This document shows, piece by piece, positions 2,732-49,500 of a stretch of 64,000 nucleotides of DNA (position 1 is the stretch's first letter; the number at the start of each line of letters is the position of its first letter). Origin of the DNA: Stylophora pistillata (taxonomy: Eukaryota); the NCBI RefSeq assembly GCF_002571385.2, contig NW_019218153.1, positions 70,907 to 134,906 on the forward strand. Reading direction: 5' to 3'. The notes beneath the pieces were generated by a model, which ran no database searches, was not told the DNA's origin, and saw nothing but the letters and a program-made list of their open reading frames with translations. Position numbers and translations under genes: made by a program.

Positions 2732-4230
2732 TGGTTTCTTTTTCTGTGGCTGATCAGATGAAATTTAGATGCAGTAAAACGATGACATCGCTGTTTGTTC
2801 CATTCCTCACAATCAGCCTGGGCCCTGGTGTTAACTTCAATGTCATTGATTTCATTTTCATCCTTTGTAAGAGATGTGATAAATTGTTGTTCTTCAGTGG
2901 AAAGTGTATCTGGAATATTCATATGTTCCTCTTCAATGTGGGGAAACCTTGGAAATTGTTCACAATTGAGTGCTTCAATCCTACGTGGCACTGAACTCAA
3001 GTCAGCTTTGGCTGAAAAATTAGATTCAGTAAATAAAAGCTGATAGGATCCAAAGGAACCTATTGGGCATTTACCAAATTTGGTGTCCACCATGTTGTGT
3101 TGTCTAGTATCTGATGCCATTTGAGATAGTCCCATGTTTGCATAAATTTTACTCAAATCTTGCTTGAATTGTTCAATTTTTTCTTCATGACATACTGCAC
3201 TTATCCTTGCTTCATAAAGAAGTGACTTCACTCCTCCATCTTTAGAAGTTCTAGTAGAACTAGTTTCGCATTTAGTTTTATTTACTATCACACTGGAGAT
3301 GGGCTGTGGTGAAATGTTAGAGCCTCCTCCCTTTCTGTGCCATTTTTGTAGTTCTGAAGTACAAGCTAGACCTTCAGTCTCATCTTTATCTTTACAAAGA
3401 TCCTTCGTCGACTTACAGTCATACAAAGTATACTTGCAAAGTTTTAGCATTAAAGCTAAGATGTGATTGCAATATCCAACGGTGCCAGCGACACAACTAC
3501 AAAATGCATGCAACACTTTACCAGATATAATGCATATTGCAAGCTTAAGGTCATGAGGGGCATCACTCTTTTTAAAACTGTGAGAGCATTTGGCTTTAAA
3601 ATAGAACCCTCGTTGATCACTTGTTGTTATAATTTCGTGAAGATACTCATCTTGAAGAAAAGTCTGTGCTTTCCTCAAGTTGGTTGGAACGCTTGTGCTC
3701 TCTTTGTTCGCGATTTTTTTACCAGAATTTACAATGTGCTCGTCCATTTCAGCCTTTGTAAACAGTGGCATTTTCTCTAGAGAAGTACCCCAGTTTTCTT
3801 CAGGATATTTTACCGATCGTACTCGAGGCTCGTTGGAACAATTACTAGAAGTAGACTTGGTCAAAGAAAGTTTTCTTCGCGTGTACAGTTGATTTGGATC
3901 GGGATCCACGATTTGTTTGTCTTTACCATTCTTGATGAATTCTTCGACTCTGTAAAAAATATTGAACTGTTTTGATTGAACTTACATCAACTACATTGAA
4001 GAGTGAAGCTAGAACTTGATTTTCAGGAGGCAGGCATACTAGTTCACTGATCGACCTCTTCGTGTATCTTACCTTTTCACAAGTTCTGCTTTTGTTTTAA
4101 GTCCTTTCCCAGAGTCTCCTCTACATTTCAACCAAAATTTTAGTTCATCGTTTTTTAATTCTGAAGCATTTCGACCTTTTAGGGAGGCACCAGGAATGTC
4201 ATCTTCGCTTAAGCTGATATTAGATGTCAT
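2732..4230 (-). CDS. Transposon accessory protein: SAP-like domain + SWIM zinc finger + start of YqaJ-type exonuclease; 2 exons (4230-4073, 3949-2732), truncated by gap
   Basis: Exon 1 MTSNISLSEDDIPGASLKGRNASELKNDELKFWLKCRG...KTKAELVKR splices in phase over a GT-AG intron (4072-3950) into the 3909 ORF frame. SWIM motif CSCVAGTVGYCNHILAL. YqaJ N-terminal motif TRAQADCEEWNKQRCHRFTASKF lies just before the gap. Confidence 0.82.
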
Positions 4231-30600: not shown

Positions 30601-33600
30601 GAATGATCTAAAAAAATTCGCGCAACCCTCTCAGCCAATCAGATGTAAGAGTACAGCAAATTCGACGTGGTCGCTTACGCTCCTCCACAATTCCCACTGT
30701 CTATGAAGCACGACTCTCTTTGGCTCCACTCGCCATTTTGATTTTTTTGGTTTCGTTTTGACGATACTCAGTCGAAAGGCACTCTAACTATCCTTTCGGA
30801 GACGACATTATATCAACGGTGAACACTTGGTATACTTACTTATGTTTTACCACGAGTTCACACCAGCGATGTCGAATCTGCAGAAATGAAACACACGATC
30901 ATTGCCTTAGCACTAAAAATCCAAGGGCTGAGCTATCCTCGTGCTCAACAAACCTTTGTTTCGCTACGTTCTTATTGTCGTCGTAGTCGCAGATTGCTTA
31001 AAGTTACTTTTACGATAATCGGAACGAGCACTGTTGCCACGGAAAAGAAACTTCCATGATTTAATTCAAATTACAAATTTAGTTATAAAAGGTGAAGGGC
31101 AGAGAGACTAAAAATTAAAAGAACATAAAAAGACAATTAGAGTGGTTAAAACTGGAGGATTTACTGGTAAACTGTCTTCAAGGGAACGACGAAATGAGCA
31201 TAGCGACAAAATATTTGACGAACCTCGGCATTTCCGTTTGATAAGTTGTAGCATTTGTCCAACTGACGCAGTGTGTTATGGGATATCGCCTCTCGCTCCA
31301 AAAGTTTTTCCAGCAACAAAACAACTTGTTCAGCGACCTCCTATAAAAGGGAAAAAAGAAAGAAAAGAAACCGCTACATTAACCGTCCGGTAAGGCTTAT
31401 TTGAGATTCCTGAGGCACCGAAGGGAGAACTAAATCGTCATTTGACGTCGGAATTCTTCGGGTCGGTTTGGATCGTTCCGAAATGTACCGACAATAGGTT
31501 AAGACGCTTTTCGGAACGGTACGAGTAAGAACAATGGGCTGCTGTTGTATTTGCATTAAAAATCTTAGAACTCACCAAATTGGAGCTGGGAGGTTTCTTT
31601 CTCTTTCGAACTTTGAGCGTCTTGTTCCGTTTGTTAATCGTATCTTGTTTCTTCCAGACCTGAAACTAAAAATATCCGACAATTTCCCAAAATCAGCACT
31701 TAGATATCGGCATTCAATAAATCAATAAACGCCAATGAAGTAGTTTTCTTCAGCTAAGTTAACCGGGCACACACCTCGTTTTCCACCTGAGAAACAAGTT
31801 CATTGTCCGGGCTGTCAAACCTCTTCGGAAAAGACTGGGAGCAAACAAATAAGAATTTCATTTTAGTAGCACTAATAGCGCTATCTACTGCGAGGATCGC
31901 ACATCATACGTAAATAATAAGCATGCAAAAAATTCATCATGCTCTCTGACTGAGAGGACTTTAATTAGTCCCGAACAGTTCAAAACGTTGAAATAAAATG
32001 TATAATCATTGAAAGGCAATCAAAGTATTTCTCGAGGAATCTGGAATAAGTAAGCATTTGAAAAATATTTACAGACACTAACACCACTAATAAGCTGGGG
32101 TCTCCAGAGCTTTGAAAATCTACACATTTATTCGAGTTTGATATCAAAATCATTTGATTAACTGTATAGAAGTGAAAATTTGAAAACCTTATCAATCTTA
32201 AACTTCAAGGAGTCAGTAAAATGCAATCTAGTCAAAGACTATTAGCTACTTATAGACTTATTAGCAACTTATGTACTTATTAGCAGTGTATTGTTTTCCA
32301 ATTTACAGTAATCTAGTCTCCTGTTAATTTCTGTAACCTTTTTTAAGTACTTCTTTATTTTGTGCTCTTCTTATATTAATGTTTAGTATTCAAAAATAAC
32401 TCTAACTATTTTAAACTTCCTTCATATCTTATAAATTCCGTTTGCTTTTTCTTTTTTCTTGTGCGTGTGTGTGTGCATTTGTGCTTCAATCTTCTTGCTG
32501 ACCTGTATTTTAATTTTATTTAATGCTGATGTTAACCAGCTGCCTGGCTCCGCTAGTTCTTATGGTTAATCCAGGCTTCTAGTACTCCAATTTTTTTCTA
32601 ATAATTTCTTTCAAATTTGTAACTCTTTTGCTTAGAGCAAGTATGAATGTGAGTACAAATAAAGATTATCCGTTGTCCGTTAAACACATCCAGGTCGTTC
32701 AAAACACGATGACACTTCAACGACTTTTTTTAATTCAGTTTTTAGTTACGCAAGTTTAATAAGTATATTATTTTGTTCCTAGCTACATAACAAACTTACC
32801 CTAGGTAATCCAGGGCTTTCCAGCCATTCATGCGTGAGCTTGTCCTTCATTTCTCTTTGACATGAAAGAAGCCAACAATTAATAGAGTATAAGGAAAATG
32901 AAAACGAAGGTAGACGTTGTATCCATCGGTTACGATAGAAGCTCTTGAGTCTTACCTTGGCACATTGGGAAACCTTTCCATAAAGAGGCCGAAGAAGTCC
33001 TATATGGTTATCAAAAAAGAAATAATAAAAAATACAGATTTTACGACATCTTGATAGCCCACAGGCAGAACAGGCCATGTGGAAGCATTTTAGAATATGC
33101 ATTTCACTAAAGCCGTTTCGAATTTCCATTTTATAAAGGAATATACCTAGATAAAGAAATTATGTCTTCAAATTTTGCCGTCAGTAAAAAACTACTTACT
33201 TTGCTTTGCAGCTATTTCTTTACCTATCTTTTTGTGTCTGAAGCCGTTTCAATATCCATTTAGATTTCGAGTTGTACTTCCAATAACAATTACTTTCACT
33301 CTAAATAGACAGTCACAGAAATAACTCATACACAAACTCGTCCTTATACTTGGACATAACATTTAATTACATAATAAAGTCGATCATAAAATTACTTCAG
33401 ACGGTTTTTTCAATATGATGAGAAACTAAATGATCGCAGCACAAACCACTACATCGAATCTTTAACCCTTTACACCCTAACATCAGTATGCATATTCTCT
33501 ATACTGTTCTCTATACATTTCCCAAGGTGCTGACAAGGAGAATTTTTTTTAATAATCAAGAGTTTCTTTAGGTGATGATCATTTCTTTTATTCTCGTGAC

Positions 33601-36600
33601 TCTACTGTTTTATTCAGGGATCACTCTTAGGGTTGAAATGGTTGAGCCATAAAAGTAGACACGGAACTTGCCTCTGAAGTAACAAGTTGTTCTTTGAAAT
33701 GCTGCACATACTCGAACAAAAACTGATCAAATTCTTCAAGTCCAACCATATTCGCCATGCGATGAAGCAAAAAGTAGCCCTGAAAGGAAACAAGACATGG
33801 TTATACTACCATGCGCTGTTGTACAGCGGTTGTATGTAGTATGGGTTACGAATAGGTTCTCATTGAACACAGTTGTCAAACATTGGGCATGCGCACGGGG
33901 ATCAAATTTGGCCGGCCGCACACTCAAAAAAGGTAAGGTCTGCACTTTTATCAAATGGACCATTCAGCCGGAGTTTATCTCGACTTCTGTAAACATAAAG
34001 CGACTAGGATCACGATAAGGAATATTATCACCTCAAAGCCCCCTCTCCCTCCCCACCCTCCTACTCAAAATTTGATCAAGGCTTCCCTGACATTCGGCTA
34101 GTGTCCACCTATTTTTGCCCGAAACATATTACTCGGCCAGGTCTCGAACCCAGACCTCTCGACCCGTAGTCCAGCACGCTGACCATTACACCGCCGCGTC
34201 ACGGCTTCCGCCACTTTCTGTTCAAATGAATATGAAGCAAACAGGGCACACCTTGAGGTAATGAACTTGTGTCCATTTTTTGGAGCAGATTTGACCGAAC
34301 TGGACCACAGTGTGCGGTTTGATAGATGAAGAATCCGGCTGACAAGAACTCCTCTCAACAGCTTCAGCCACCGAAATAGCTGTGAATCATAAAAGCAAAC
34401 GTCAGTGGGACTGTTGTGAAGGTTGCACTAGCTTCCCTGCGTACCAATCTGGTTTCTCTCTCTTGCTGCTCTTTCAAAAGAAAAAAACCTGTCTTTAAAT
34501 GGGCAATGGCTTGTTCGGAAGCCTCACGGTTCCTTTTACCTCGAGGCTCCAGTCCAATCAAACTATGTATTTATCCAAACATATGCTATATATCATACAT
34601 AATTTTCTTGTAACCTCTTTGTAATGGCATTCTTTCTGAACTATAACAGATTTGTTTGTTGTTAAGAGTTTTTGTTACTTGAACTAAAAGGACAGGCTCT
34701 TACCAGATTTCGGTTTCACGACTTTAGGCCTGTAACGAAAAGAAAACATCCCGTTTTGTTAGCTTTACATCCAAAATTATAGGCTTGTCTTGAATTCTGT
34801 ATTACATCCAAAATTATAGATCTGTCCTGAATTCTGTATCAACGATTTCTTTGTTTCTTAGTGTTACAATATTCAAAGCAAGACGTGTACTTAACTCTTA
34901 CAGCTGCAGGAGCCTACTCCCTCTAAGTCGCCTCCATCCCCCACCCCCAAAATGTACTACCTCGTTTGGCTTGTGCCGCCATTCATGGTGAGGTTTTCGG
35001 AGGTAAAGTCATAGCTGAATCTTCATTTCTAAGTCACTGTTACTTGCCACTCCAGAGATTTTCAGCTGTAAGATTTTCTTACCTCAAACACTTGAGACTG
35101 TCATCACATTCTTTGATTTCAGACAACAAACATCTGTGCCGAAGAATTTGCCTCATTTCTCGAAAAAACCTGTCTTTATCCCTGGACCACTACGGGGGAA
35201 AAAATTGAGCAGAATACAGGTCACACAAATACTGTGTCTTAAAACCTGCTTAGTTGACAGTTTTGTGTACGCTGAAGCGATGGGTGGCAAAAGCACGAGT
35301 GGCTTGAGACTGAAGATACTCGCACCTTCGCAGTTCGCCTCTTAGCGCACACAAACCGTAGATGGTGCACAAAGAACGCAGGCTGACAGTCTCAATGCCC
35401 ATTTAGGGCACTTTACGGTCGCTGTAAAAATACCAATATAAAAAAAAGGTATCAAACCAGAAAGAGAGAGGTGGTTCAAAAAAGCAGACCCACCGGCCAT
35501 TTTACAAAGCGCAGCCAAGAAGGAGAACTTGGGGCAATCAAGAACAAATACAGTGAGTAGCATGGTGAAGGTTTTGGACCCAGGACCCCACCAGTGCCCT
35601 AACCACTCGGTCTCTCCCCAGTTCACTCTCCTTCGTGGTACACATAGGTTACATGTTAACCACTTCTGGGAGTTGAAGGGTTCAGTAAGTAAGTAGGTAA
35701 ATAATTGTAAGTATCCAACCTCCTCTGATTGTAAGTCTCCAAGTGTCGATGAAAGTGGTGAAAATTCACCGCTTCGTATGTCGGCAAATTTCCGTCACTA
35801 CTCACCTCCACTTCGGCTATCAGTGTTGGTGCGTTATTTTTTCAGTGTATGTAAGAAACACGAATTGTGCACGCACCCTCTCAGCCTTTGATTGAATCTT
35901 CTCTTCGACGAACGTGGCGAACCCCTCTGAAAGCCATTCCTCTCTCCAATCCTTGGTGCCAACCAGGAGCCCGAACCAGGCATGCGAGATCTCATGTGCA
36001 AGGCGTACACGCATGCTCGCCTCACCAGAAAGAAGAGACTGGGACAGAAACACCAGATTGGGACTATAAGACCGAAAAAAGATGAATATCTCAAAACTCA
36101 ACTTTGAATTTCAATTGTTTGGAACCTGGATTCAAACTAGTCGGTAAGAATGGAATATACACCAACCTTTTGAGTCCCATGCAAGCGAAACACTTTGGCA
36201 AAACCAACATGTCCAACCTTCTGAATGGAAAAGGACCCAACAACTCGCAGGAAGCTTCTAGAAATTTAGGAGCGTATCCTAGCAACTCCTCTGCCGCCCT
36301 GTCAATCAAACTAGGCGGAGCAAACAAACGACACGTTACCGGCACGTTGGGGTTATCACCATTTTTAGTGTCGGCGGTTCTTGATAGCCGGCACTGCCAC
36401 CACCCCACAGCCAATGCCAGAGTTGAGCAGGGAAGAGGACAATCCATCTCATAGTGGTACGTCACTGAAAAATGATTTTAAAAAAGTTTTTTTTTTTCTA
36501 GAAATTTCACGATACGGAATTTAGTTACACACTTGAGGTATGCTGTTTGGAGTAGATGAGACTTATTTTTACGAATATCTCCGTTAACTTCTGAATTTAA

Positions 36601-39600
36601 AATTCCCAACTATAGCAAAAGTCAACAGCGAAACTTGAACAAAACGTCGCACGAAAGAAACCACCTAACAATCTCATTAAAACTCAAACTGATTAGTCAA
36701 ACGGCACCAACATTTTTGGCGAGTCACCGAGGCAGTAAAGGAAAACCAACGACATTCCGGATCACTTCTGACAAACGTCTCCCATTCAATGGGTTAGCCC
36801 ATTCAATATTTCTGTTTTTAGTGATCGTGCATTGCATATTCGCACCATGTAGCTACCTTTCCGTCTATCAAACTTAAGTTTTGAAGTTATTCGCCTGCAG
36901 TCTGATTCAATCTCCTCGATCCATATTCATTCCCCTTCCCTTTTGATTTATCCTTAATTTTATGGTACTCATCACTTCTGTCAAATATTTTTATACCGGA
37001 ATTAATCTATCTAAAGGCGATTCTCTGTGACGGTATGATTGTTTCTTAAATGTAACGTAGTTGCTTTTAAACCTACCTTTCGTGACGTGGATTATAATGA
37101 CGGCCAACGATATGACTGACCAGGAGCCCCATTTCTCGAATGTCCCGGTGAATTAACGGGCCCGAAGCTATATTTTAGAATCAGAATTTGATTTAAAGAA
37201 TAGAGAAGCATATTGTGGCTTCCTGACCAGTCCATTTTGTTTCTTTAGCTGAAAGTTTTACTGAACAATTTTCAAAACTTTTTAAACCTTCATCTCGAAT
37301 GAAACCAGAACAGCTTTACAGGCCCGACGAGTTACCGGGACGCTCAAGAAAGGGGGCCCAGAAAAGAAAAGAATTGAAGTGTTACCTTGATCACCATTCC
37401 CAGTGGTTTTCCCAACAAACTGATTCCCACTCATTAAGACAACGCAGCCCTCCGGAACGTGGATGGATGCCTGCCATGTTGACATGGCAACAGGAGGCTC
37501 CTGACATGGCATCAGAGAACGATTGTTGATGTAAGCACCGGGCGAGAATACAGAGGGCCTAGTGCAGAGGGAAAATAACACAAGTTCAATTCATTCAATC
37601 TCCTTGAAAAATTCCTGGCTGTTTTACATTTTTTCACAAGATAACAAGGAGTATATGGCGTTATATCAAGACAGGATTCCACCATCTAACTGACCACGTT
37701 GTCTTCTCTGATCAATTGTTCTCTAGATAATGAATTGATCTCATAAGGAGAGGTTACAAATTCTGAATCAGGTCCAGGTTCACGCCTTACTTACTTGCCA
37801 TCTTGATCAGTAGCCCAAGTCAATGACGATCCTTCTGGACTGGTGTGGTATTTAATCCACACACATCTTGGCCACGCCTTGCCAGTTGCTTCAGGTTTCG
37901 AAATCTGTACAAACCAACCATACACTGAATACGACAGGCCCTTAAACGGCAAAGGCGTATGGGATTTGTCGCCAACAATGTTCCCTAAGAAGCCGAGTTG
38001 TACCTCTGAAAAAGACATTTCGGGTGTCAAAAGGCCGCTTTGTTTCTGTCCGCAAAATGTTACCTGGAAATCATCTGGAAGAACAACTTCGCTCACAGAT
38101 TCAATGCTCACCAAGGTACTGTCCAACGTCATTTGAAATTGCTTTTTCGTGACCTCCTCGTTGCGAGGTTCAAGAAATAGCACTATGTTTCCTTTCATAC
38201 TTTTTTCATTGAATTCGACAGACAAGTCAAGAATGTAGTGATACACGAGAACTTCGTCGACGTTTGCCATTAACGGCAGATCGTCGCTTTTATCCCATTT
38301 ACAGCTAATAAATCTTTCATCGTTCCTCCTTCCTTTACAATCAGAATCAGATTCGCTTTTTGTTCTCTTAGTTAGATTTTGAGGTACGTCGCAAACGAAA
38401 TCAGTCAATAGAGGCCTCTTCCCCCCACAACTGCCTTTTCTATCTGCTTTTTCACCAACATTAGTGGCATCATCAGTTTCGACTTCTTTGCACTCCACCT
38501 CATGGTTTCCTTTACAATAATCCGTAAAATTCTGAAGCCATGATTGGAATGACATCTTCATTTGCACTCCATTCGGCAGAGTGCAGGAACTTGTGTCACT
38601 TACGGTTACCGCTGACCTAATCCTATCCTTTTTCTTGTTTTTCTTCTTTTTATCCTTCTTCTTCTTCCTCTTTTCCAGAACTGCATGTTTATCTGCCCCA
38701 CATTTTCCAGGAGACGAGGGAGGAATCGTGGGTGCATTTTCATCCACTATAGTTTCCCCTGAGGTTCCTTCTACCATTGACGTGCTCATGTTCGTAGCAT
38801 CAAAGCTACTAATCGACGATAAATGCTCAGGACGAGGCCCATCCTCAGCTCGGTACATTGTAACTTCTGCATCCTGGGACCCCTCCCCTAGGTTTGCGTC
38901 TGCCCTAACCGGCACAATGGCTGGACTCAGTTTGTTGCAGCATATCACACCTTCCGAATCCTTACGCAAGACATCTTCATAGTTTGTCAGTTCCATTTCT
39001 CCTTTTTCCTCTGTTAAACTCTTACCCTCCCACTCTTGGGTCACGCACGGGTTAGGGCTAACAGCTGTACATGGATCCTTACGAACCATGGATCCTTTTT
39101 CCTTGTGACACAAACCATTGTCTGCTTCTTCAAAAAGCCGAGATTCATCACCAATCGGCTTCATTTCACTTTCGTTCCTCTGTACCGAGACTGTGCTCAT
39201 CCCATCTGAGCCACCGTCCACGAATGGCTCCTGCTGAAAAGGTGCTCCATCTGCCTCCTTCACACACCTGCTTCTCTCCTGACTGTATTCTTCCTCCTCC
39301 TTGAACCCCGCTTCCTCCTCCTTGAACCCCGCTTCCTCCTCCTTGAACCCCGCTTCTTCCTTCTTGAACCCCGCTTCCTCCTCCTTGAACCCCGCATCCT
39401 CCTTGTGTACGGTCGCAGATAAACTGAAAATTGAAGGTGAATTCTCCAAACACGTCGCGCCACATGGTTCCTCAACAAGCCTTTGCTTGTCATGATCTGT
39501 CTTAAAGTTGCCATCTTTTTCCTTTGATGATACTGAATTTTTTCCCAGTGGATAAGTTGCTAACAAATAGTTTGAGGCTGACGATGGAATGCTTTGACTC

Positions 39601-42600
39601 ATGACATCGTCAAGCTCATTTCCTTCAGTAATGGTAATGTTTTCAAGCGAAGACTTATCGCTGTTGTTGAACACTTCCTCAGCTAACGCCTTAGCGCATG
39701 TCACAATGTTAGAACCAGAGCTACATGCATGTACAGCTTTATCTTCAGTTCTCTCTGCACTGGAAGTTGTGGGTGTCTCGCACTGCCACATTTTACGGCC
39801 TTGCTCCTTTCTTACTGTAGTGGGCAGAGTGCTTGGCACATTATTCCCTAAATTGTCGTGAAACGATTGACATGCGTTTTCGTTTGTTGTAGATGTGCAT
39901 ACAATTGAAGGTAACGTTACGTGAGAGGAAGAATCTTCCTCTGGATTGCGCGCTGGGGGTTGGACGTCACTATTGGAAAGACAAGTGGAAACTCCTTTCT
40001 CGTGAACAGATTCCAACTTGTTTCCTCCACTGGAAGTCATGTGGGTAGCTTTCCCAAATGTTTCAATCGTAGATTTGGACTCTACAGGCTTTGGCGCCGC
40101 TGATAACAAATGGAGTCCACACTTTCTACCCAAGCCTGACAAAACGTAGCAAGTCTCCATGTACACTTCTTCCAACGTCCACGATGATAAACCATGTCCA
40201 ACTGGCTTTTTACTGTAAACAGCTAGAAAAGGACAAAGACATACATTATTAACACATGGCAGAAGTCCGAATTCTGTGACAAGGGCCGAAGTCAAAATCG
40301 AGTTCATGAAGTGTTTTTCTGATGCAAAAGCATCTGTTACTAGTTTCATAAGCACCAGCTTCTTTCATACAACAAAAAAGGAAATACCAGTCTTAATAAC
40401 GCCAATTAATTTCATCTTCGCCTTACTTTCGTACATAACCTTACATAGATTAAAACTGGAAAGAAAGCAACCCGTAAAATGGAAGTTGATGCCGTCGGAA
40501 GAGATTCTCGTCCCTTTAGAGTACTTGTTTCCGCAGGCTACTGTTACTTTTTACGTCGGTTGGTCACAAAAAATATTTTAAAAAAACTTTAAGGCTTCGT
40601 TATATTCTTTCTTTTTCTTTCTCGTATCTTTACTCGGGGTGCTTTCATAATTAATGATGGGGGGGGGGGGGTGGTTACTTTAGTTCTGATTTCACGACCC
40701 TGAATTAAAATGGTTACTCCTTTCTCACCTGAGGGAATTCCTTTCCCAGCTAATCGGTTTCCATTCTCCCCAATGGCAAGATGAATCATGTAGAGAAGTA
40801 CTGGGAATGAGGCAGAACAGTCTGCTCTGTTGTCATCTTCTATAAGCCCAGTCACCGCAAGATGTCCGTTACCAGACGTCGTTTCGCTATTTTCCTGGAT
40901 CTCTTTGAGCTTATTTTTCATTACAAAGGCCTGCATAGCTGTAACATGTTGAAAGTGAATTCCATAACAAATATCACCTGTTCTGAGATCGTTCCACTCC
41001 TTGATAAGCTTAATAAGCTCTAAGTTCGGCCTGGAAAACATTGGTCCTATTGCTACGAAGATAACTTTGAGGTTATCATTGGGCAAATGATCTAGATAGT
41101 TCTTCAGTGACTCTTGGATGAGGCAGATTTCACCGACTTTCATGTGGAAAACCATATCCTCGAATTTAACGTCCGAAGCTTTACGCATTCGAAGATTTGC
41201 AACAATAGCGTCAGCCAAGGCAATATACGATCCAAACTGCTTAGAATTGTAAGCCTCTTGGTTTAATGCAGAAGGAAAGTCGTCCTGGACAAGAAAAATG
41301 ACCCTCATAGATGACATGACCAAACCAGGAGGAGTGACCTAGAAATGGGTTAAAAATATATGACGAAGTTATTCTTGCAAAACGAATATAGTTAAAAAGT
41401 AGGACAACAAAGGCCAACATTAACAAGCGATCACATGAAAAATGGCATTCAGAAAGATTTTAAACCCAACATTTCCACGGCCCCGGCAAAATGTAGCCGG
41501 TTTTTCAGCGAGATACAAAAAGTGGGAACGTTATTTCCCTAATCAGAATTTTCTCATTTCGTTGTTGCGTTAAAAGTCTTCTGGTGACACACGCCGCTGC
41601 CTACCAAGATTCCCTCAGAATCTGATCCGTGTAACATGGATAAATATTAGGGTTCCTAACAACAATACTGAATCAAAGATACAGCTGAATTCATCGCCAC
41701 ACCCAATCTCACAAGGTAAAAGCTCTTGCCTGCATTTCTCCATGACAAACAATCTTCCCAAACAGCAGGAAAACGCGAGAAGCCAGGGTGCGATTGTTAT
41801 TAGTTTTGCATCCAATTGGTAGAGAAAATGGCGCGAGTTTTTCTGGACTAATCACGAAGCGGAGACATGCAAAACCAACTAAAAAAAGAATATGACAACA
41901 ATGGTACATGTACCTGATCTTCTTTGCCTTCTGTTGAAAGCCTTTCCTCGACATTATCTCGGCCTAAGAACCCTAATCCCATCTCCCTTGCTAGATCTGG
42001 AAATCCCTCAGCGCATGCTCTGTTCACGGTATCCTTCAGTCTTGTACCACATGTGCCGGTCGTCTTATTGCAAACCATTGTCGAGAGCATCAAATGAAGA
42101 TCAGCAACTTGGGAACCAGTCTCGTAAACTTCTTTTGTACTACCGCAAAGAATGGAGCGAAGTCTTGTCTTCAGCCAATCAGCATCTACGGGCCAATCCT
42201 AAACAGGGAAAAAACGATTTTGCAAACCTATCGAGATTCGTAAACAATAAATACTAGTAATCTGGAAAACTTGAGGATGTTTTGGTAAGTTAAGGAGCAA
42301 TGCATCCAAGCTATCCTTTAAGATAAACTCTGGTGATTTAAATTTCTAGTCTCCAAGCATAAAGGCTGGGACTCATAAGGAATAAAGCAACTAATCTCAA
42401 ACAAACCCCATGCGTACTGTGTTGGAAAGATTTTTCTGGGACACATTTTAACATAGAAAACATTGAACAAATTTAGTAAACCAGGGTTGAATGTGTCCAT
42501 ACTGTTGGGGAGGTTGAAAGCTCTGTTAAAAGAACAAAGATTTTTTTCTCCATGTCACATAAAGGAAATTTCTGCATCAACTAGTCACCATGAGGAGATG

Positions 42601-45600
42601 AATGATCTTTATCCAGTGTTTCCCTCCTTTAATTATCAACAAGAAACTTACCACGTGAGAGCAATCTAATTTTAATGTGAAACAAGATGAGATATGGGTA
42701 GCCATCAGAACATCTTTCAGCACTGTCTGACTAGCCATCACAAAGTCATGGAGAGAACAAAATTCCTCAAATCCACTCTCTTTTCCAATGGCAAATGGAG
42801 TGCATGAGAAAACTTGACCTTGACAACTTGAGTGACAGCTCAATACTGCGACAACTTCAACTGTGAGGAAGCAAACATAAGAAATCCAGTAACAAATTTA
42901 ACTCAAACTGCATAAAAAGCAAACATTTAGTGAAGAAGAATATATTCAAGCCTTTCCAAAGAAAATTAAATATTGTAAATGGCCAAAATTTCTTAATGAT
43001 GAAAAAATTATCATCAAATCAGGGTTGTTAGGTGTTCAATTCTAAAAGAATTGGCATGTGTGGCAATAATTGACATGAAAGGTGGTTGCGTTAAAGAGGT
43101 TAGGAACACTTATGACTGACAAATAGATTCCATGTTGTCTTGTGTCTGTCCAGTTATAGATCCCAGATGAAATGAAAATGTGGCACAAACAAAAGATAGT
43201 CCTCCAAGAGGACATGTGCTCACTGTTATTGGATGGTATACCTAGTTACATTGTGCATGTGACTGCAGAATTGTTATCAGTAAACTTGTTCACAAAATAA
43301 CATTTCCACAATGTGATGTGATCCCAGTAAAAATAAACTTCGGTTGCTAGTTCACTTTCAGTCAATCTCACTTCGGGATCCAGAAGTCTTCAGAAGTTAC
43401 AGACTATCTTTTTTACAACATGATGACATATTGTGTACTGGTCTTGTGCCAGAAAGCACAAAAAGTAGCACACAAGGTGAAGATGTGTGTGTCAATGATG
43501 TTCTTCCCACATTTTCAAGTCATTTGTTATCTGTTACTGTACAGAACCATGGCAATATGGAATTTATCTGTTAGCTGTAAGTGTTCTTTACCTCTACAAA
43601 GCAATCATCTTTCATTCATATTTCAAAAGAATTGTTAATACATTTTTTAGATTTAAATCAATTTGTTAAAACCAATCAAAATAATCCATACATGGCTTAA
43701 TAATTAATAGATACAGCTCTTTTACTTAATAGTTGATACCTGTTGGCCAGTGACTGTTCAAGAATGACAGCTTTGCAATTGACTCCATCAGTTCTTGACG
43801 ACTCACAAAGTTCTGAGTGATGACCATGCAATCATTATTGTGAGTCCCTGGGTTACAGACCAACTAATATCAATAATGCGCAGATCAATTCAAAGCTTTG
43901 ACATCCCCCCCCAACCTGGGGTCACCCACAGGCATTTGACCATTATCCCTGCCTGGGGGGGGAGAGAAATTATGCTGGTGGCTTAAATTTTAAATGAGAC
44001 AGCTCAAAGGTGGTGAATGATTGTAAGTGTGTAACCTCGGAAGTACCCATTGTGCTTTAACAAGCGATCCCTGGCCAGAAAATCCAGCCGAGGATTGCTG
44101 CTTGTTCATCCAGTGAATTTTGCTGGAAGCTGGCAATTAGCAACAACCCTGATTCCCTTCTTGCCTGATTATTTACCTCCAAGTGGCCATGGTTGAAGTT
44201 CAACATGCTACTCACTAGTTCACAAAATGTCTCATTATTAACCATTAAAAGTGTCCAATAATGAACAAGAATCAAAACATGGACATCGCATTTGTATAAA
44301 TTATTTTGGTGAAACTATAGAATAAACCCCCAATTGTGGACTTAATATATAACACTTCACCAAGATCATGGCATTTCATACCTTCAGCCCTAAGAGCAGC
44401 TTTCAGAAACAAGGAAATCCAATCCCCAAACTGAGATTGTGGGTCTTTTAAATTAAACACAGCAAGAACCTAGAGATATATCCAAAGATAAGCTATTCCA
44501 TGATAAAGATATGAAAATTAGTTTGAGCACATTGTATCAAAAAAAAACAAACAAACAAACTAATGAATGAAAGGTATTTAAATTTGTTCTAATCATATCA
44601 CTTGTGATCTACACACATTACTGATTAGAACTAATGAGTAGTCATCTGTTTCCTGGATAACATATTATTTTGTTTCTAACACATCTTAGCGGGCCAAAAT
44701 CTTAAATCCTCAAATTTGACTGGCCAATTGTGTGATCAGACCTAATCTAGCTCTTTGTAATAAAACCCCCAATCCTTTTTGGTCACTCCGAGGAGTTCAG
44801 TGGCTAGAGGGTTAAATTTTGTAAACTAATAGCAGGACAGTGAGAATTGGGGAGTGAACTGATGATATTTAGCATTTAGGTATTTATTTATATACTATAA
44901 TTCACAAAGGTTTCTCATCACTGTGAATTTGCATGTGAAAAACTAAAAACTACAAGAAATAAACAGTGCTATAACGTTGCAAGGAGAAATAAGTAAATGC
45001 ATGAATAATAATAATAATGACAATAATAATAAATATACAAAATCACTGGAGGGAACTAAGATAATTTGTTATAGTAGATTTAAAATCGTCCACAGATGGC
45101 TGGTCTAACAAAAAAGAAGGTAGTGTGTTCCATTCTTTTATAGTTCTGGTAAAGAAGTTATAGACATTACTGTTACTGCCAATGTTAATGAATTTACTGC
45201 TATGGTAGGAGTGTGTAACACGTGTGGGCCACGCTATGTACTTTGGGATATTGACCGCAATTTTTTTCTTCACTATCTTGTACATGGTAGTAAGTCTCGC
45301 AATTTTGGTAAAACATTTTTCTTAACTGCAGCCACACCTTTCTGACTCCATTGGGTAACCATTGCCTCTCAATAAAATCCTTGCTATCAACAAGATGAGA
45401 GTTGCTGAACGGATCATCAGTTCCAGAATCCCTTTCTTTCATGTAATGATGAACTTCTTTGCCCACATGTCTTTCTAGAAATTTTACGTTCTTTATGGTG
45501 TTGAGGAGCCAACAAGGTTTCCCTAGAAGATCAATGGTTAAAATTTTAGGTTAAGTGGTTTTAACTTTGATAGAAACAAATAGAATTCTATCCAAGATGG

Positions 45601-46488
45601 TCTATAGATTTCATTCTAGAATCTTAATGGATTCATCTATCTTTTTATACCCCTTCCCTAGAAACCTTTAAAAGGTGTTCACCTCAGTGGGTAATGTAGT
45701 CTGTTTTGGACAATATAATTTGGATATATCAACAAAGTTGAAATGTTAAATTAGCCACCGTAATGATTACAAAAGCTGACGTTTCGAGCGTTAGCCCTTC
45801 GTCGGAGCAAGGGCTAACACTCGAAACGTCAGCTTTTGTAATCATTACGGTGGCTAATTTACCATTTCAACTTTGTTGATATATCCAAATTATTTCGTTA
45901 CTCCCACCGACACAGCCCCAAACAGTTTCTTTCGAAACTATCAGCCTTTATTCATTTGTGTTTTGGACAATACCTTGTAAAGCTTCTGAATGCTGCTTGC
46001 ATTGTGGAAAGTCGCATCTTATGTATCTTGTGTCTGGAGATGTGTCAAAAGCAAAAACAGTACTGGAGAACCGCGTCAGAAGTTCTTGAGTCTACAGGAC
46101 AACATACAGAAAATTAAACACAAATAATTACCAGGACAAGAAAATGAATGAATCTGAATCACGCAGACAAACAAAAAATGATATGTCTGCTATTATGCAT
46201 AACGAAACGTTCAGATTTCGCTCTGTAGATGACCAGCTATCGTTCTCTACATGCAAATGCCACGGCAGCTGTACCTCAAAGTCACATCACACCTTGATGC
46301 ACTTTAACTTGTGCTTGGTGTTCTCAACAAATTTCATTGATTGGAATTTGACACGTTGATTTTCATTCAATAAAAGATTCAAGTTAGAAGTTACAACTCT
46401 CCATGGACTAAAAAATAAACACGGGAATCCTTACCTTCGTAGCATTGCCGTTATCTTCTCCTTTTGATCTTACTGTTTGGTCCGCCAT
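27689..46488 (-). CDS. AOPEP: Aminopeptidase O (M1 family) with ~1200-aa N-terminal extension, ~1901 aa, 24 exons: 46488-46435, 46091-45974, 45522-45338, 44469-44382, 43847-43740, 42860-42652, 42198-41914, 41338-40729, 40222-37795, 37558-37386, 36464-36167, 36063-35877, 35189-35083, 34562-34540, 34379-34252, 33779-33672, 32999-32956, 32854-32800, 31834-31775, 31659-31576, 31340-31224, 30877-30840, 30433-30385, 27838-27689
   Basis: AOPEP signatures DDLPLMAN..LVYHYILDL, INNRSLMPCQEPPVAMSTWQA, HEISHAWFG...EEWLSEGFAT (HEXXH-X18-E), QVHYLKGYFLL, RHRWCELVVKH, GMGIYLFGELI. Exons total 5706 nt with consistent phases. The AOPEP half is very secure; the first 8 exons are predicted from splice signals and frame continuity only. 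Confidence 0.85.
28515..29743 (-). mobile_element. 5'-truncated L2-type LINE (RT C-terminal half) in the last AOPEP intron
   Basis: GSVLGPILY, FYADDTQL, KLKLNGDK, ARNLGVVFD, LHWLPVEHRIAFK, GDRAFAVAAPRLWNALP; (TTA)n-like 3' tail near 28515-28537. Confidence 0.9.
28735..28869 (+). mobile_element. Short SINE-like 3' fragment inserted in the L2, with 12-bp TSD
   Basis: AAAAACCAGGCT at 28723-28734 and 28870-28881. Related sequence at 29810-29952 and 31873-31912. Confidence 0.8.
29773..30175. mobile_element. Penelope-like terminal remnant with inverted arm and hammerhead-like motif, interrupted by a fold-back SINE-like insert
   Basis: Arm GTAATTTGGTAATATCAACTAAGTTGAAATT is inverted relative to 30086-30117. 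CTGAAGAAGGGCTAGCGCTCGAAACATCAGC at 30026-30056. Near-TSD TTGATCT(G/A)TTT. Inner insert flanked by AAGTTGAAATT (29783-29793, 29954-29964). Confidence 0.7.
33462..33645. repeat. Representative of abundant ~200-bp TTAA-CCCTT (piggyBac-like) MITE families; further copies near 15575, 16660, 17425, 18810, 22580, 47250, 49555, 50890, 51962, 63740
   Basis: Recurrent TTAACCCTT...ATATTCTCTATACTGTTCTCTATACATTTC...GGAGAATTTG...AAGGGTTAA-like sequences in introns of all the multi-exon genes. Confidence 0.75.
39290..39404 (-). repeat. Coding 21-bp minisatellite, ~5.5 units, encoding (EEAGFKE)n in the AOPEP linker
   Basis: TTGAACCCCGC recurs at 39301, 39322, 39343, 39364 and 39385. Confidence 0.95.
45005..45310 (-). 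mobile_element. LINE (CR1/L2-group) 3'-end fragment
   Basis: RLTTMYKIV...TRVTHSYHS...FFTRTIKEWNTLP...DDFKS followed by a (TTA)n tail. Confidence 0.75.
45716..45958. mobile_element. Penelope-like insertion: inverted terminal fragments with hammerhead-like motif, 14-bp TSD
   Basis: ~85-bp inverted arms (45715-45799 / 45809-45893) containing AAGGGCTAACGCTCGAAACGTCAGC. TSD TGTTTTGGACAATA at 45702-45715 and 45959-45972. Confidence 0.85.
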
Positions 46489-46563: not shown

Positions 46564-49500
46564 ATGGCGGGCATCTCGAACTCGGAAACGAAGCAAGTTT
46601 TGTTAGCTTCAGAGGCAGAATTGTACATAGAGGAGCTGAAAACATATCCTTTGAAGGAAATAGGAAGTCCAAAGTGAGTGTATACTAAGTTTTTTTTTAG
46701 AGCTTTGAGTGGAGTATTTCAGATTTTGATCACTCCCAATTTTTTCGCAAGTAAGGTATGAAACTAAGATTATAAACAAATGTGTCCTTCTCATTTTGCC
46801 CAGATGGATGAGTCAACATGAATACATAGAAAAGCTTAACATGCAGGTGAGAGTGTGAGCTAAATTGCTAACCCTTAGGCAAATCATTATTGGCCAAAGA
46901 TTTTCCTAAATGAACTGTGCCTAGGGGTATATTCTTATCAGTATTTTTTGTTTGACAGGCAATAATAAGCGCTTCATCGCAAGCAGACGAATTTATCAAG
47001 GAACTGCTCATAACCTTGGAGAAGGTGCCCACTCAAAGTCAATTGAATTTATTGATAGCATTTGTCTATAACTTAAAAATTAATCTGGTAAAACATATTA
47101 ATTATTTGATAATTAATAAATTGGTAGTGTCATGAATTTATATGATATATGTTTTTAAGAATCATAGCATTCCATGAATAGCTGTTATCTGAGCTAAGAG
47201 ACATTACTGCAATCATGCACTTGTGAGTTCCAGACTTTTGGTTGTTTACCTCAAACTCCCAATATCTACAGCTGATTGTTAATTCTCCCCTCTTGCTGCT
47301 ATACATTTTCTTCTTAAGTATAGTTACAAGAATTTGATGTTAGATCAAGGTAACAACTTCTAACTGATAAGTTTGAGTATTCTCATTACCTCTTTACTGG
47401 ATAATATATGGATATTACAAGGAGAAGTTACCTGTTAATCACTTCTCAGGGAAGTTTTAAGGGTTAATGCCATTTGGGGCAGGTGGCTATGGGTAGTTGT
47501 GTAGCCGTGAGGTCTCATTAAGTTATGGTATACTTGGCAGACTGGAGAATGGATTGTGGCTGTTTTTAAGACTACTACCTGATTAAGAACCTTCTATTTT
47601 GAGACCTGGACGACAGAGCTGAATAACGGATACGCATGCGCCAGGTTTTGCTGTGGAAACACGGATTTTGAGTAGTTTGCATGGTTGATTTCCTATTCTG
47701 TTGCTTTGAGGCATCGTTTTCCTTGCCGCTTTTCTTTTACAGAACAACCTCCAAAAATTTGGTACACCCCCTAAAAGTTTTCAAAAATTAATTTTCTCCT
47801 TTAAACCTTTGGAAATAGGAAAGTGCCTACGATGAAAACAGAGTTCCTCAGTTTTAAAGGTCAGCCCTTATTATTTTCCACTAATTTCGCAAAATTTTAG
47901 ACCAAGGACACTTGAGCCTGCGTTGTTGACCGCATACCCGCTGACGTAGCATTTCATTATTCAGCTCTGTCGACCTGGACAGGTCAATGATTGGGTTTAA
48001 TGGGTAAGAAGTCACCTTTACTCTCCTTGTGGCTCCCTCTTGATACTGGCAAACTGGCAGGGACACCTAAAAAAAAAAATAGTGGAAGAGGAATACCCTG
48101 AGGTAACTAGCATCTCATCTAGGGGAACCACAAGTAGCAATACTTTTTAAAGCCATTAATCATGCTAGGAAAAAAACAGGAATAAGCTTTGGCCAGATCA
48201 GAAATATGACCATAGATGTTACTTACCTTAGCTGCTTTCCTTACAAACAGATCCCTGTTCTGATTCACGAGTTACTAGCTGTGGAGCTTTGGAAAAGCAA
48301 GGTGTTTCCAAAAATTTTAGAGTCAGGCTTCAACCCATCAACAACCTTACCTATTTACTTTGTGGTAAGTATCACAATTGTGCTGTGTTCACCTGAAGGT
48401 ACAATGTTTTAAGAATTTTTTTGAATCTCCCAAATTCCTGCCAAACTGTACTAGTTTTAAGTATTTTTATTGATTTGAGATTTTCATCTGGAAGACTTTG
48501 TGGCATAATGGTTGGCAAGCTGAACCCTAAATTCATAGGTTCTGGATTTGAGCCATCTACTAACATATTATGGCAAAGAATCTCTTCCACCAACACTGCG
48601 TTGAGCGATCTCTTACCTCCCCAGAGAACACAGCAGTTGAGAACTAGGTTGCATAATTATATTTTACCTAAGGTTCAGACAAGCCGTTTTAAATCAGTTT
48701 TTATTAATTAATAGATGTCTTTTCAGTAGTAATTAATACCTTTTCTTTTTCTGTATTCATTCTATTCATGTTAATTGTTGCACGTCTGTTTGCAAAATAA
48801 TTCTTAATAAAGACCTTTATTATTACTTGTAGTTGGAGTAGACATATTTTCTCCCAATTGCTTTGGGCTCCAAAAAAGTTGGGGCAAACAAGTGCAGGCT
48901 CTTAAAGGCTTTTTAGCCCCTAGAGTAACAAATTACCAGTAACCTAAGATCTACCAATGAACTAAGATCTTCTGCAGCCTTCTAGGACATTGTTAAAGTA
49001 GTGATTAATGCAGCTGCTTCTTGGCAGCTCAAATACTTCCTAATTTAAAAGATATTTTGTGACACTGCAATATTAAATTAGAGAGCAGGGCTGGGTTGTT
49101 CAAAGCTGTGTTAAGATAACCCAGGGTTAGTGTGAAATTTGATTTCAGATCTGAAAGCTCTGAAAGAAAATTCAGCTTAATTCCATTTGTCTACAATTTG
49201 ATGATTGAATGTCCTAAAAAGAACTAGGAAAATTATCTCAAAATGGCTTTTGGTGAGAGAAATTTAGAAACCTGGATTAAAATTTAACCCTGGGTTAGAG
49301 CTAATCGGCCTTTGAACAACTGGGCCCAGGAGAAAAGACAAATTCTGCTTGTTGTGTTATGAAGATCTAGTCATTTTTTTTTTTTGCCATTTTCTAGCTT
49401 TTTCATGAAGCAACAGTCATAAGCCTGTTGGAAACTGTTCTTTATCATAAGGTAAGGTTAAATGTGGTATCATCTGTGCATCCATCTTCCGATAGATCAT

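What the first reader, a model, noticed from the sequence alone, without database searches (positions are those of the whole stretch)
37795..46488. Aminopeptidase O fused in frame to a ~1200-aa N-terminal extension: candidate two-protease polyprotein
Seen: the motif that begins vertebrate AOPEP (DDLPLMAN, ~38286) lies ~645 codons inside a 2.4-kb stop-free exon. That exon splices in phase to eight upstream exons starting at ATG 46488 beside the ZMYND10 promoter. The product is ~590 aa of globular-looking sequence, a ~600-aa low-complexity linker, then complete AOPEP. I know of no described M1 peptidase with this architecture. Inference: a lineage-specific gene fusion, or an ancestral form lost in vertebrates.
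Basis: partly seen in the sequence, partly recalled or inferred. Interest (0 to 1): 0.8.

Follow-up and report, generated by a model that had tools for sequence, protein, structure and literature searches.

The report
Caspase-like module fused to aminopeptidase O
This coral gene really does encode one 1904-residue protein in which a previously unnamed caspase-fold domain and a long floppy linker sit in front of a complete aminopeptidase O; jellyfish, sea anemones, soft corals and a sponge have the same layout, so it is probably the old animal form of an enzyme that vertebrates, from recall, keep only as its second half.

Summary
A 2428-nt stop-free exon (40222-37795, minus strand) carries DDLPLMAN 645 codons in and is spliced in frame to eight upstream exons starting at ATG 46488. 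RNA contigs from three studies and stranded raw reads show three of the upstream splices and the exit splice into the next AOPEP exon. The model equals the RefSeq model LOC111338453 of Stylophora pistillata ("uncharacterized protein", 1904 aa), which maps to the window at about 100%. The fusion is not specific to this lineage. The N-terminal unit is joined to Peptidase_M1 plus Leuk-A4-hydro_C in Rhopilema, Nematostella, Dendronephthya, Actinostola, EukProt models and the sponge Oscarella. No stand-alone copy was found. The linker diverges fast (11-45% identity) yet stays open in six genomes, and 14 of 14 indels against a relative are multiples of three. The N-unit has no Pfam family. AlphaFold models place a caspase/CHAT (clan CD) fold at residues about 110-330, with the conserved His and Cys at the dyad positions, followed by a generic alpha/beta domain. 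"Two proteases in one chain" is therefore plausible. Catalysis and self-cleavage are untested, and a shorter internal-start isoform is not excluded.

The parts
46435..46488 (-). Exon 1, coding part, starting at ATG 46488 (18 codons), donor AAG|gtaagg
   Evidence: Sequence. tblastn of P0136 residues 1-20. The 2506-nt X3 contig reaches about 46 nt into this exon by length arithmetic.
45974..46091 (-). Exon 2 (..STVFAFDTSPDTRYIRCDF..), ends in phase 1
   Evidence: 100% tblastn match to P0136 residues 19-58. The motif is conserved in cnidarian and sponge homologues.
45338..45522 (-). Exon 3 (..WLLNTIKNVKFLERHVG..), needed to restore the phase between exons 2 and 4
   Evidence: Phase scan. Homology to P0052 and P0060. 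tblastn 98%.
44382..44469 (-). Exon 4; the caspase-fold domain starts here (first strand, ..VFNLKDPQSQFGDWI..)
   Evidence: Domain limits come from the AlphaFold models of the homologue P0052.
43740..43847 (-). Exon 5
   Evidence: The RNA loose end at 42864 reads the last 30 nt of this exon.
42652..42860 (-). Exon 6: core of the caspase-fold domain, with the candidate catalytic His (codon 42834-42832, motif LSCHSS) and Cys (codon 42684-42682, motif HISSCF)
   Evidence: RNA splice. Codon positions. Cys invariant; His present in every sequence that covers the column. Single copy in the genome. hhalign places both residues on the caspase SHG His and QACRG Cys.
41914..42198 (-). Exon 7: rest of the caspase-fold domain (invariant GSxKEVYETGSQxAD and PDLxxEMGL)
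   Evidence: RNA splices on both sides. Invariant columns.
40729..41338 (-). Exon 8: second alpha/beta domain of the N-unit (203 codons plus 1 base)
   Evidence: RNA splices on both sides. Only exon-sized relatives, with no named family. Fold matches are generic alpha/beta.
37795..40222 (-). Exon 9, the 2428-nt stop-free exon. It holds the conserved tail of the N-unit (SSWTLEEVYMET at 40187-40152), an E/S/K/T-rich linker of about 600 codons, and the first ~164 residues of AOPEP from DDLPLMAN (38285-38262)
   Evidence: The homologous exon is open in L001, L002, L006, L007 and L008. 14 of 14 indels are in phase.
39290..39403 (-). 21-nt tandem repeat, 5.4 copies (EEAGFK units), inside the linker; this is where the assembled RNA contigs break
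38625..38666 (-). Lys-rich basic cluster in the linker (KKKKDKKKKNKKKD). It could be a nuclear targeting signal or a cleavage site; this is inference only
37386..37558 (-). Exon 10, the next AOPEP exon (..PGAYINNRSLMPCQEPPVAMSTWQA..)
   Evidence: RNA splice 37795 to 37558 in four runs. Weak Peptidase_M1_N hit. tblastn.
35877..36065 (-). Zinc-site exon of AOPEP: HEISH at 35996-35982, followed 18 residues later by the Glu of WLSEGF
   Evidence: Peptidase_M1 E 7.5e-13. Sequence. tblastn 100%.
27692..35189 (-). Remaining AOPEP exons down to the C-terminus, covering the Leuk-A4-hydro_C-type domain (P0136 residues 1582-1904)
   Evidence: tblastn of P0136. PF09127 and PF01433 are precomputed for P0136 and were scanned here in P0060.
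46564..46674 (+). First coding exon of the divergent neighbour (MYND-finger gene, taken to be ZMYND10); its ATG is 75 bp from the minus-strand ATG
   Evidence: The name ZMYND10 is from recall.

Best explanation
One gene on the minus strand (46488 to 27692; identical to RefSeq LOC111338453 of Stylophora pistillata) makes one mRNA and one 1904-residue protein with three parts.

(1) An N-terminal unit of about 600 residues. It contains a caspase-hemoglobinase (clan CD) fold with a conserved His/Cys pair at the catalytic positions, followed by a second alpha/beta domain.

(2) A disordered, fast-evolving acidic/Ser/Lys-rich tether of about 600 residues. It is kept in frame but not in sequence.

(3) A complete aminopeptidase O: an M1 zinc aminopeptidase with HEXXH-X18-E and an LTA4H-type C-terminal domain.

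The architecture is old. It is shared by cnidarian classes and a homoscleromorph sponge. From recall, vertebrate AOPEP starts a few residues before DDLPLMAN, so it lacks parts 1 and 2.

Most likely mechanism (inferred): a tethered pair of peptidases. A site-specific cysteine endopeptidase module cuts substrates, or cuts its own linker as many clan CD enzymes do, and the M1 module trims the new N-termini.

Shown: transcription, splicing, frame, conservation, and the fold prediction. Inferred: catalysis by the N-unit, any self-processing, and the coupling of the two activities.
For: Transcript:
- Spliced contigs from three studies and stranded raw reads join exons 6-7-8-9 and 9-10.
- The exon 8-9 junction is in frame.
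- P0136 maps at about 100% from 46488 to 27692.

Coding linker:
- 0 stops in 808 codons, against 21-68 in the other frames.
- The homologous exon is open for 625-950 codons in five other genomes, with linker identity of only 11-45% where measured (four of them) against 53-88% in the flanks.
- 14 of 14 indels against L006 are multiples of 3 at 71.5% nt identity.

Distribution:
- N-unit plus PF01433 plus PF09127 in one protein in Rhopilema, Stylophora, Nematostella, Dendronephthya, Oscarella, a JGI model and two EukProt models, in Actinostola and in EukProt 'Aminopeptidase O' of 1819 aa.
- The sponge linker is only about 60 residues.

Fold:
- AlphaFold of the N-unit: pTM 0.78. The domain alone: pLDDT 80, pTM 0.85.
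- Foldseek on the domain: every match printed (ranks 1-50, near-duplicate chains omitted) is a caspase or MALT1, E 6e-6 to 9e-5, TM 0.35-0.53.
- VIA-align: ranks 1-16 are all clan CD-type (SAVED-CHAT Z 11.0, metacaspase 4 and caspase-3 10.7, MALT1 10.6, legumain 9.4, PIGK 9.1).

Dyad:
- The His follows strand 3 and the Cys ends strand 4, 50 residues apart.
- hhalign against five coral caspases puts them on the SHG His and the QACRG Cys.
Against: - No sequence model recognises the N-unit: Pfam gave nothing at E<=1-10, and it is not among the genome's Peptidase_C14 matches.
- hhalign to caspases is not significant (probability 1.8%, P 0.028).
- Structural Z of 10-11 is only 1-2 units above unrelated periplasmic-binding-type folds.
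- The residue after the His is Ser, not the Gly that, from recall, is usual in clan CD.
- Caspase-fold pseudo-enzymes exist and match equally well (Raptor Z 9.9, c-FLIP Z 10.2).
- No contig crosses the repeat at 39320-39365.
- RNA depth 3' of the repeat is about twice the depth 5' of it. One poly(A) run has only the 3' part, ending at 39355 in adapter. A shorter AOPEP-only isoform from an internal start may therefore coexist.
- No protein-level evidence was available.
Confidence: 0.8

Rival explanations
1. Two functional products from one locus. Besides the long fused mRNA, an internal promoter in the big exon, near the tandem repeat at about 39.3-39.4 kb, gives a shorter mRNA. Translated from an in-frame Met (first candidates at 39200 and 39164), it would yield AOPEP with only part of the linker, much like the vertebrate enzyme. 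The fusion protein would then be a minor form.
For: - Contig depth 3' of the repeat is 2.2 times the depth 5' of it in X1 (20 vs 8.9) and X3 (54.9 vs 25.1).
- X13 (poly(A)) has 51x on the 3' part, essentially nothing upstream (one bin at 0.74), and its contig ends at 39355 in adapter sequence.
- In-frame Met codons lie downstream of the repeat.
Against: - Raw stranded reads show no pile-up of starts (table 6 is empty).
- Depth falls back to about 4 at 37800-38200, so the profile is noisy.
- 3' bias on an mRNA of more than 6 kb explains the same pattern.
- The frame of the whole linker, including the part 5' of the repeat, is conserved in six genomes.
- The Oscarella sponge model has a linker of about 60 residues, which leaves no room for an internal promoter.
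Confidence: 0.3
2. The N-unit is a caspase-fold pseudo-enzyme or scaffold, like the Raptor N-terminal domain or c-FLIP. It would serve for docking or regulation of AOPEP, so the protein has only one protease activity.
For: - Raptor (Z 9.9) and the c-FLIP protease-like domain (Z 10.2) match as well as active caspases do.
- The His is followed by Ser rather than Gly.
- There is no significant sequence similarity to any peptidase family.
Against: - The Cys is invariant, and the His is present in every sequence that covers the column, from sponge to coral, inside blocks of near-invariant residues (LSCHSSxQGQVFSCTP, HISSCF, EVYETGSQxAD).
- From recall, pseudo-caspases usually lose at least one dyad residue.
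Confidence: 0.35
3. The fold assignment is wrong. The N-unit would be a generic Rossmann-like or periplasmic-binding-like alpha/beta module, and the His/Cys agreement would be coincidence.
For: - Foldseek on the whole 629-residue model returned only PBP-type receptors, with TM 0.14 and rmsd about 20 A.
- PBP-type chains reach Z 8-9 on the isolated domain.
- The alignment used for AlphaFold has only 10-11 sequences.
Against: - On the isolated domain, every match Foldseek printed (ranks 1-50) and the top 16 VIA-align matches are clan CD-type.
- The order of strands and helices follows the caspase order.
- An independent sequence-profile alignment hits the same two catalytic columns.
Confidence: 0.12

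Closest known systems
Vertebrate aminopeptidase O (AOPEP / C9orf3, MEROPS M1 family)
   Same: The C-terminal ~710 residues share the DDLPLMAN start motif, the Peptidase_M1 domain with HEISHAWFG...WLSEGF (HEXXH-X18-E), the CMGLxSPN segment and a Leuk-A4-hydro_C-type C-terminal domain. Three sources name the orthologues 'aminopeptidase O(-like)'.
   Different: The coral protein carries about 1190 extra N-terminal residues (a caspase-fold unit plus linker). That the ~819-aa human protein starts about 10 residues before DDLPLMAN is recalled, not tested here.
RefSeq, JGI and EukProt gene models: LOC111338453 (Stylophora pistillata, 1904 aa), LOC5513554 (Nematostella, 2051 aa), LOC135685920 (Rhopilema, 1577 aa), 'aminopeptidase O-like' (Oscarella lobularis, 1261 aa), EukProt Seg2252.4 'Aminopeptidase O' (1819 aa)
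   Same: LOC111338453 is the same gene, at about 100% identity to the window. The others are orthologues with the same three-part layout.
   Different: All are automatic models without a domain call for the N-terminal half. No paper mentions these loci.
Clan CD cysteine peptidases (caspases, paracaspase MALT1, metacaspases, CHAT proteases, legumain, PIGK)
   Same: The predicted fold and strand order match. A His follows strand 3 and a Cys ends strand 4, about 50 residues apart. A G-x-V/I-F/Y hairpin follows the His.
   Different: No HMM-level membership in C14, CHAT or any other Pfam family. Ser rather than Gly follows the His. An extra ~110-residue N-terminal segment and a C-terminal alpha/beta domain are present. 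The unit is always fused to an M1 aminopeptidase.

Membership tests
Aminopeptidase O / peptidase family M1 | Zinc-binding HEXXH followed 18 residues later by Glu | tested here: met
   HEISH at 35996-35982, then the Glu of WLSEGF after 18 residues. Nearly invariant (>=90%) in the alignment; the one shortfall is the row without an M1 half.
Aminopeptidase O / peptidase family M1 | Pfam Peptidase_M1 above the gathering score | tested here: met
   Window exon 35820-36101: 49 bits against a cut-off of 27.7, E 7.5e-13. Orthologue P0060: 87 bits.
Aminopeptidase O / peptidase family M1 | LTA4H-type C-terminal helical domain (PF09127) | tested here: met
   P0060: 59.6 bits against a cut-off of 27. Precomputed for P0136, which is the window's own protein.
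Aminopeptidase O / peptidase family M1 | Orthology to vertebrate AOPEP rather than to LTA4H, RNPEP or RNPEPL1 | tested here: inconclusive
   Only the source names 'aminopeptidase O(-like)' and the recalled DDLPLMAN start. No tree with vertebrate sequences was built.
Clan CD (caspase-hemoglobinase fold) peptidases | Caspase-type alpha/beta/alpha sandwich | tested here: met
   Foldseek on the domain: every printed match (ranks 1-50) is a caspase or MALT1, probability 1.00, E down to 5.8e-6. VIA-align: Z 9.1-11.0 for 16 clan CD-type chains, 163-199 residues aligned. This is a predicted model of a homologue (P0052), not of the window protein itself.
Clan CD (caspase-hemoglobinase fold) peptidases | Catalytic His after strand 3 and Cys at the end of strand 4 | tested here: met
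   P0052 H190 follows strand 182-188, and C240 lies in strand 232-242. The Cys is invariant and the His is present wherever the column is covered. hhalign puts them on the SHG His and the QACRG Cys. No 3D superposition or side-chain distance could be computed.
Clan CD (caspase-hemoglobinase fold) peptidases | Gly directly after the catalytic His | tested here: not met
   The motif is C-H-S-S in every homologue that covers it (S-H-S-S in Nematostella). That clan CD enzymes usually have His-Gly is recalled.
Clan CD (caspase-hemoglobinase fold) peptidases | Membership in a described sequence family (Peptidase_C14, CHAT, C13, C11, C25, C50) | tested here: not met
   No Pfam hit for the N-unit at E<=1 (P0060, P0052) or per exon at E<=10. 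The locus is absent from the genome's PF00656 matches. Atlas leads to CHAT/DUF6642 clusters score only 0.80-0.81.
Clan CD (caspase-hemoglobinase fold) peptidases | Cys-dependent peptide-bond cleavage | not testable with these tools
   Needs recombinant protein and substrates or probes.

The most novel reading that the evidence does not exclude
The N-terminal unit is a catalytically active, so far undescribed family of clan CD cysteine peptidases. It would exist only in non-bilaterian animals and only as the front half of aminopeptidase O. The ancestral animal AOPEP would then have been a tethered endopeptidase-aminopeptidase pair, possibly self-cleaving in its linker, of which the vertebrate lineage kept only the M1 half.
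Probability: 0.4. Interest if true: 0.72.

Novelty: new variant of a known kind. Interest (0 to 1): 0.6.

Why it matters
AOPEP is a poorly understood M1 aminopeptidase that is linked to human dystonia and to the renin-angiotensin system (papers listed). If its ancestral form was physically coupled to a caspase-fold module, that points to a lost partner activity and to the kind of substrates it trims, namely new N-termini made by a site-specific cut. It would also add a new, animal-specific branch to the caspase-fold superfamily, in the very lineages used to trace the origin of apoptosis and immune proteases. Finally, it gives a natural example of a ~600-residue tether whose length and sequence drift while its reading frame is kept.

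Tried and rejected
- Pfam on every N-unit exon and on the big exon gave nothing, apart from a meaningless Ferlin_C hit at E 2.5.
- PDB sequence search with exon 8 gave nothing at E<=10.
- Atlas: exon 8 gave nothing. P0052 residues 1-540 gave only sub-threshold leads at 0.80-0.83, some to CHAT/DUF6642 clusters. I treat these as leads, not evidence.
- P0052 (629 aa) looked like a stand-alone N-unit. I rejected this. Its stop lies in a retained intron (donor A|GTAAGT at L003:2162, acceptor near 3127) and the frame reopens to the end of the contig.
- Word search for stand-alone N-units of 346-1100 aa found only a truncated Actinostola model that still carries the M1 domains.
- Foldseek on the whole 629-residue model gave PBP-type hits at TM 0.14 and rmsd about 20 A, which are uninformative. 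The domain had to be folded alone.
- hhalign against coral caspases is not significant (probability 1.8%). I use it only for which columns pair.
- The open frame reaches 40355, but the real acceptor is 40222.
- The very deep 32-nt RNA spot at 37229-37260 comes from a gene on another contig.
- I did not build a joined spliced protein or send one to any search tool. Searches used single exons by reference, or database proteins (P0136, P0052, P0060).
- The search of earlier findings returned nothing for this place.


Full report
**What is there.** On the minus strand, the ORF listing shows an open frame at 40355-37791 that ends in the AOPEP-like sequence ..DDLPLMANVDEVLVYHYILDL... The next small ORFs downstream carry Peptidase_M1 (HEISHAWFG; E 7.5e-13) and a weak Peptidase_M1_N signal. 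The finding's region contains no N runs.

**RNA evidence.** I laid contigs from three RNA data sets of different studies, plus stranded raw reads, on 37200-43199. They show four GT..AG introns on the minus strand. After resolving the ambiguous bases these are 42651-42199, 41913-41339, 40728-40223 and 37794-37559.
- One assembled contig in each of two runs passes from 42864 through three splices to 39366.
- A second contig passes from 39319 through the 37795/37558 splice and on for about 1.9 kb more.
- The break between them coincides with a 21-nt tandem repeat at 39290-39403. Raw reads cover that stretch at the same depth as its surroundings.
- All raw reads have the polarity expected for a minus-strand RNA.

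The exon 8 to exon 9 junction reads ..CCC TCA G|CT GTT TAC.., so the upstream frame continues into the long open frame. The real exon is 40222-37795, or 2428 nt.

**Upstream exons.** With splice signals and phase arithmetic I placed eight upstream exons. The third exon (45522-45338) is required to restore the phase, and homologues confirm it. The RefSeq protein LOC111338453 of Stylophora pistillata (P0136, 1904 aa, "uncharacterized protein") maps onto the window at about 100% in 22 pieces from 46488 to 27692. The contig lengths upstream of 42864, and a loose end that reads the last 30 nt of exon 5, agree with it.

**Is the linker translated?**
- The exon's frame has 0 stops in 808 codons. The other five frames have 21-68, and 2000 shuffles gave a mean of 50 and a minimum of 28.
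- Five other genomes were reached through exon-8 homologues of 38-78% identity (L001, L002, L006, L007, L008). Each has the same layout: the exon-8 homologue, then one stop-free exon of 625-950 codons, then the Peptidase_M1 exons. That exon starts with the conserved S-x-W-T-L-E-E-V-Y-M-E-T segment and ends with D-L-P-L-M-A-N and the AOPEP N-terminus.
- In the four of these loci that were aligned to the window (L001, L002, L006, L007), the linker between these anchors is only 11-45% identical and full of gaps. The anchors themselves are 53-88% identical.
- A codon-blind nucleotide alignment of the window exon with L006 (71.5% identity) has 14 indels of 3-189 nt, and all 14 are multiples of three. 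If one indel in three were in phase by chance, that outcome has a probability of about 2e-7.

The tether's sequence is free to drift, but its frame is under selection.

**Distribution.**
- An all-against-all HMMER search with exon 8 found only 16 cluster representatives among 1.84 billion proteins, nearly all exon-sized ORFs.
- One cluster holds a EukProt model of 1819 aa named "Aminopeptidase O". Pfam finds only Peptidase_M1 and Leuk-A4-hydro_C in it, and both lie in the last 410 residues.
- A word search with its first 620 residues found eight long proteins that all carry PF01433 and PF09127: Rhopilema, Stylophora, Nematostella, Dendronephthya, two EukProt models, a JGI "aminopeptidase O", and "aminopeptidase O-like" of the sponge Oscarella lobularis (36% identity over 90% of the N-unit).
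- In the sponge the linker is only about 60 residues.
- The only apparent stand-alone copy (P0052) ends in a retained intron.
- A search in the 346-1100 aa range found only a truncated Actinostola model that still carries the M1 domains.
- The coral genome has a single copy of the exon-6 sequence.

So the fusion is shared by Hexacorallia, Octocorallia, Scyphozoa and Homoscleromorpha, and the lineage-specific reading is refuted. No bilaterian hit appeared. This is weak evidence of absence, because the searches were word- and length-limited. That vertebrate AOPEP starts just before DDLPLMAN is recalled knowledge and was not tested here.

**What the N-terminal unit is.** No Pfam family matches any exon or the full-length homologues, and no PDB sequence matches exon 8. 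The alignment of ten homologues shows blocks that are invariant or nearly so and are rich in His, Cys, Ser, Glu and Asp: LSCHSSxQGQVFSCTP, EEFCSxHD, HISSCF, GSxKEVYETGSQxAD, PDLxxEMGL and LLYxIHLxxGENG.

AlphaFold2 on the homologue P0052 with this alignment gave a confident fold for residues 1-540 (pTM 0.78). An exhaustive structural comparison split it in two:
- Residues 111-328 match SAVED-CHAT (Z 11.0), Dronc, caspase-3, caspase-4, MALT1, Raptor and a metacaspase.
- Residues 349-540 match many unrelated alpha/beta folds.

Folded alone, the first domain gave pLDDT 80 and pTM 0.85.
- Every Foldseek match printed for it (ranks 1-50, near-duplicate chains omitted) is a caspase or MALT1, with E 5.8e-6 to 9.3e-5 and probability 1.00.
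- Its 16 best VIA-align matches (Z 9.1-11.0) are all clan CD-type proteins, including legumain and the GPI transamidase subunit.
- The secondary-structure order follows that of caspases.
- The conserved His follows strand 3 and the invariant Cys ends strand 4, 50 residues apart.

A local profile-profile alignment against five intronless caspases of the same genome is not significant (probability 1.8%, P 0.028). It nevertheless pairs LSCH-S..GQVF with LLSH-G..GQIY and HFSSC with FIQAC, which are the catalytic His and Cys columns.

In the window the two codons are 42834-42832 (His) and 42684-42682 (Cys).

Points against a canonical enzyme:
- Ser follows the His, where clan CD enzymes usually have Gly (recalled).
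- Pseudo-caspases (Raptor, c-FLIP) score as well as active caspases do.
- The margin over periplasmic-binding-type folds is small.

**How it probably works.**
- Shown: one transcript, one frame, three conserved parts.
- Inferred: a cysteine endopeptidase module and an M1 aminopeptidase held together by a disordered tether. Either the first activity feeds new N-termini to the second, or the first cleaves the tether to release AOPEP. Self-processing is common in clan CD (established knowledge).
- The Lys-rich cluster at 38666-38625 could be a targeting signal or a cleavage site (speculation).
- I put the fused protein at about 0.93, the caspase fold at about 0.85 and catalytic activity at about 0.5.

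**Open point.** RNA depth 3' of the repeat is about twice the depth 5' of it in two runs. A poly(A) run holds only the 3' part, and its contig ends at 39355 in adapter sequence. This could be 3' bias on a long mRNA or a second, internal start.

**Neighbour.** A plus-strand gene starts at ATG 46564, 75 bp from the minus-strand ATG, and ends in a MYND finger. The name ZMYND10 rests on recall.

**Novelty.** The gene models exist in RefSeq, JGI and EukProt, but half of each is unannotated. I found no paper on the architecture or on these loci. I rate it a new variant of a known kind: AOPEP with an undescribed caspase-fold partner domain.

Exons were searched one by one by reference.

Noticed in passing
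window 37229-37260 (+): A 32-nt spot inside an AOPEP intron has very high RNA depth of the opposite polarity (contig depth about 350-500 in X13) and loose ends on both sides. The upstream loose end maps to another contig (G000:C217:46548-46577) and there are no splice signals here, so the reads come from a highly expressed gene elsewhere that shares 32 nt.
   Followed up: yes
window 45740-45870 and 45046-45320 (-): Intron 2 of the gene holds a near-perfect hairpin (inverted repeat of about 60 nt arms, MITE-like). Intron 3 holds an open frame that resembles the C-terminal tail of a retroelement reverse-transcriptase protein (..FFTRTIKEWNTLP..).
   Followed up: no
window 39290-39403: A 21-nt tandem repeat of 5.4 copies (94% matches) encodes EEAGFK units inside the linker. 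All Logan RNA contigs break here. In an octocoral-like relative (L001) the linker instead holds about 40 copies of a 10-residue TTDILPSQEG-type repeat.
   Followed up: partly
window 39355 and 37200-40222: RNA depth 3' of the repeat is about twice the depth 5' of it in two runs. One poly(A) run has only the 3' part, ending at 39355 in Illumina adapter. This could be an internal transcription start or 3' bias.
   Followed up: partly
ENA ERZ25878582, contig of 1.76 Mb (no DNA served): A distant exon-8 homologue (P0049, unknown taxon) is followed 4.4 kb downstream, on the same strand, by a called open frame of 3371 residues that runs off the fetched range. It may be an extreme version of the linker exon.
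   Followed up: no
G000 contig C67, 665-740 kb: There is a cluster of at least five tandem caspase-domain matches (Peptidase_C14, E 1e-29 to 1e-56) within 75 kb of the coral genome; four are intronless and full-length, the fifth is partial with internal stops.
   Followed up: no
L001 2172-3707 (+): In the octocoral-like relative, a 511-residue single-exon ORF with an EF-hand-like C-terminus lies about 5-6 kb upstream of the first N-unit exon recognised in that locus. It was not examined.
   Followed up: no
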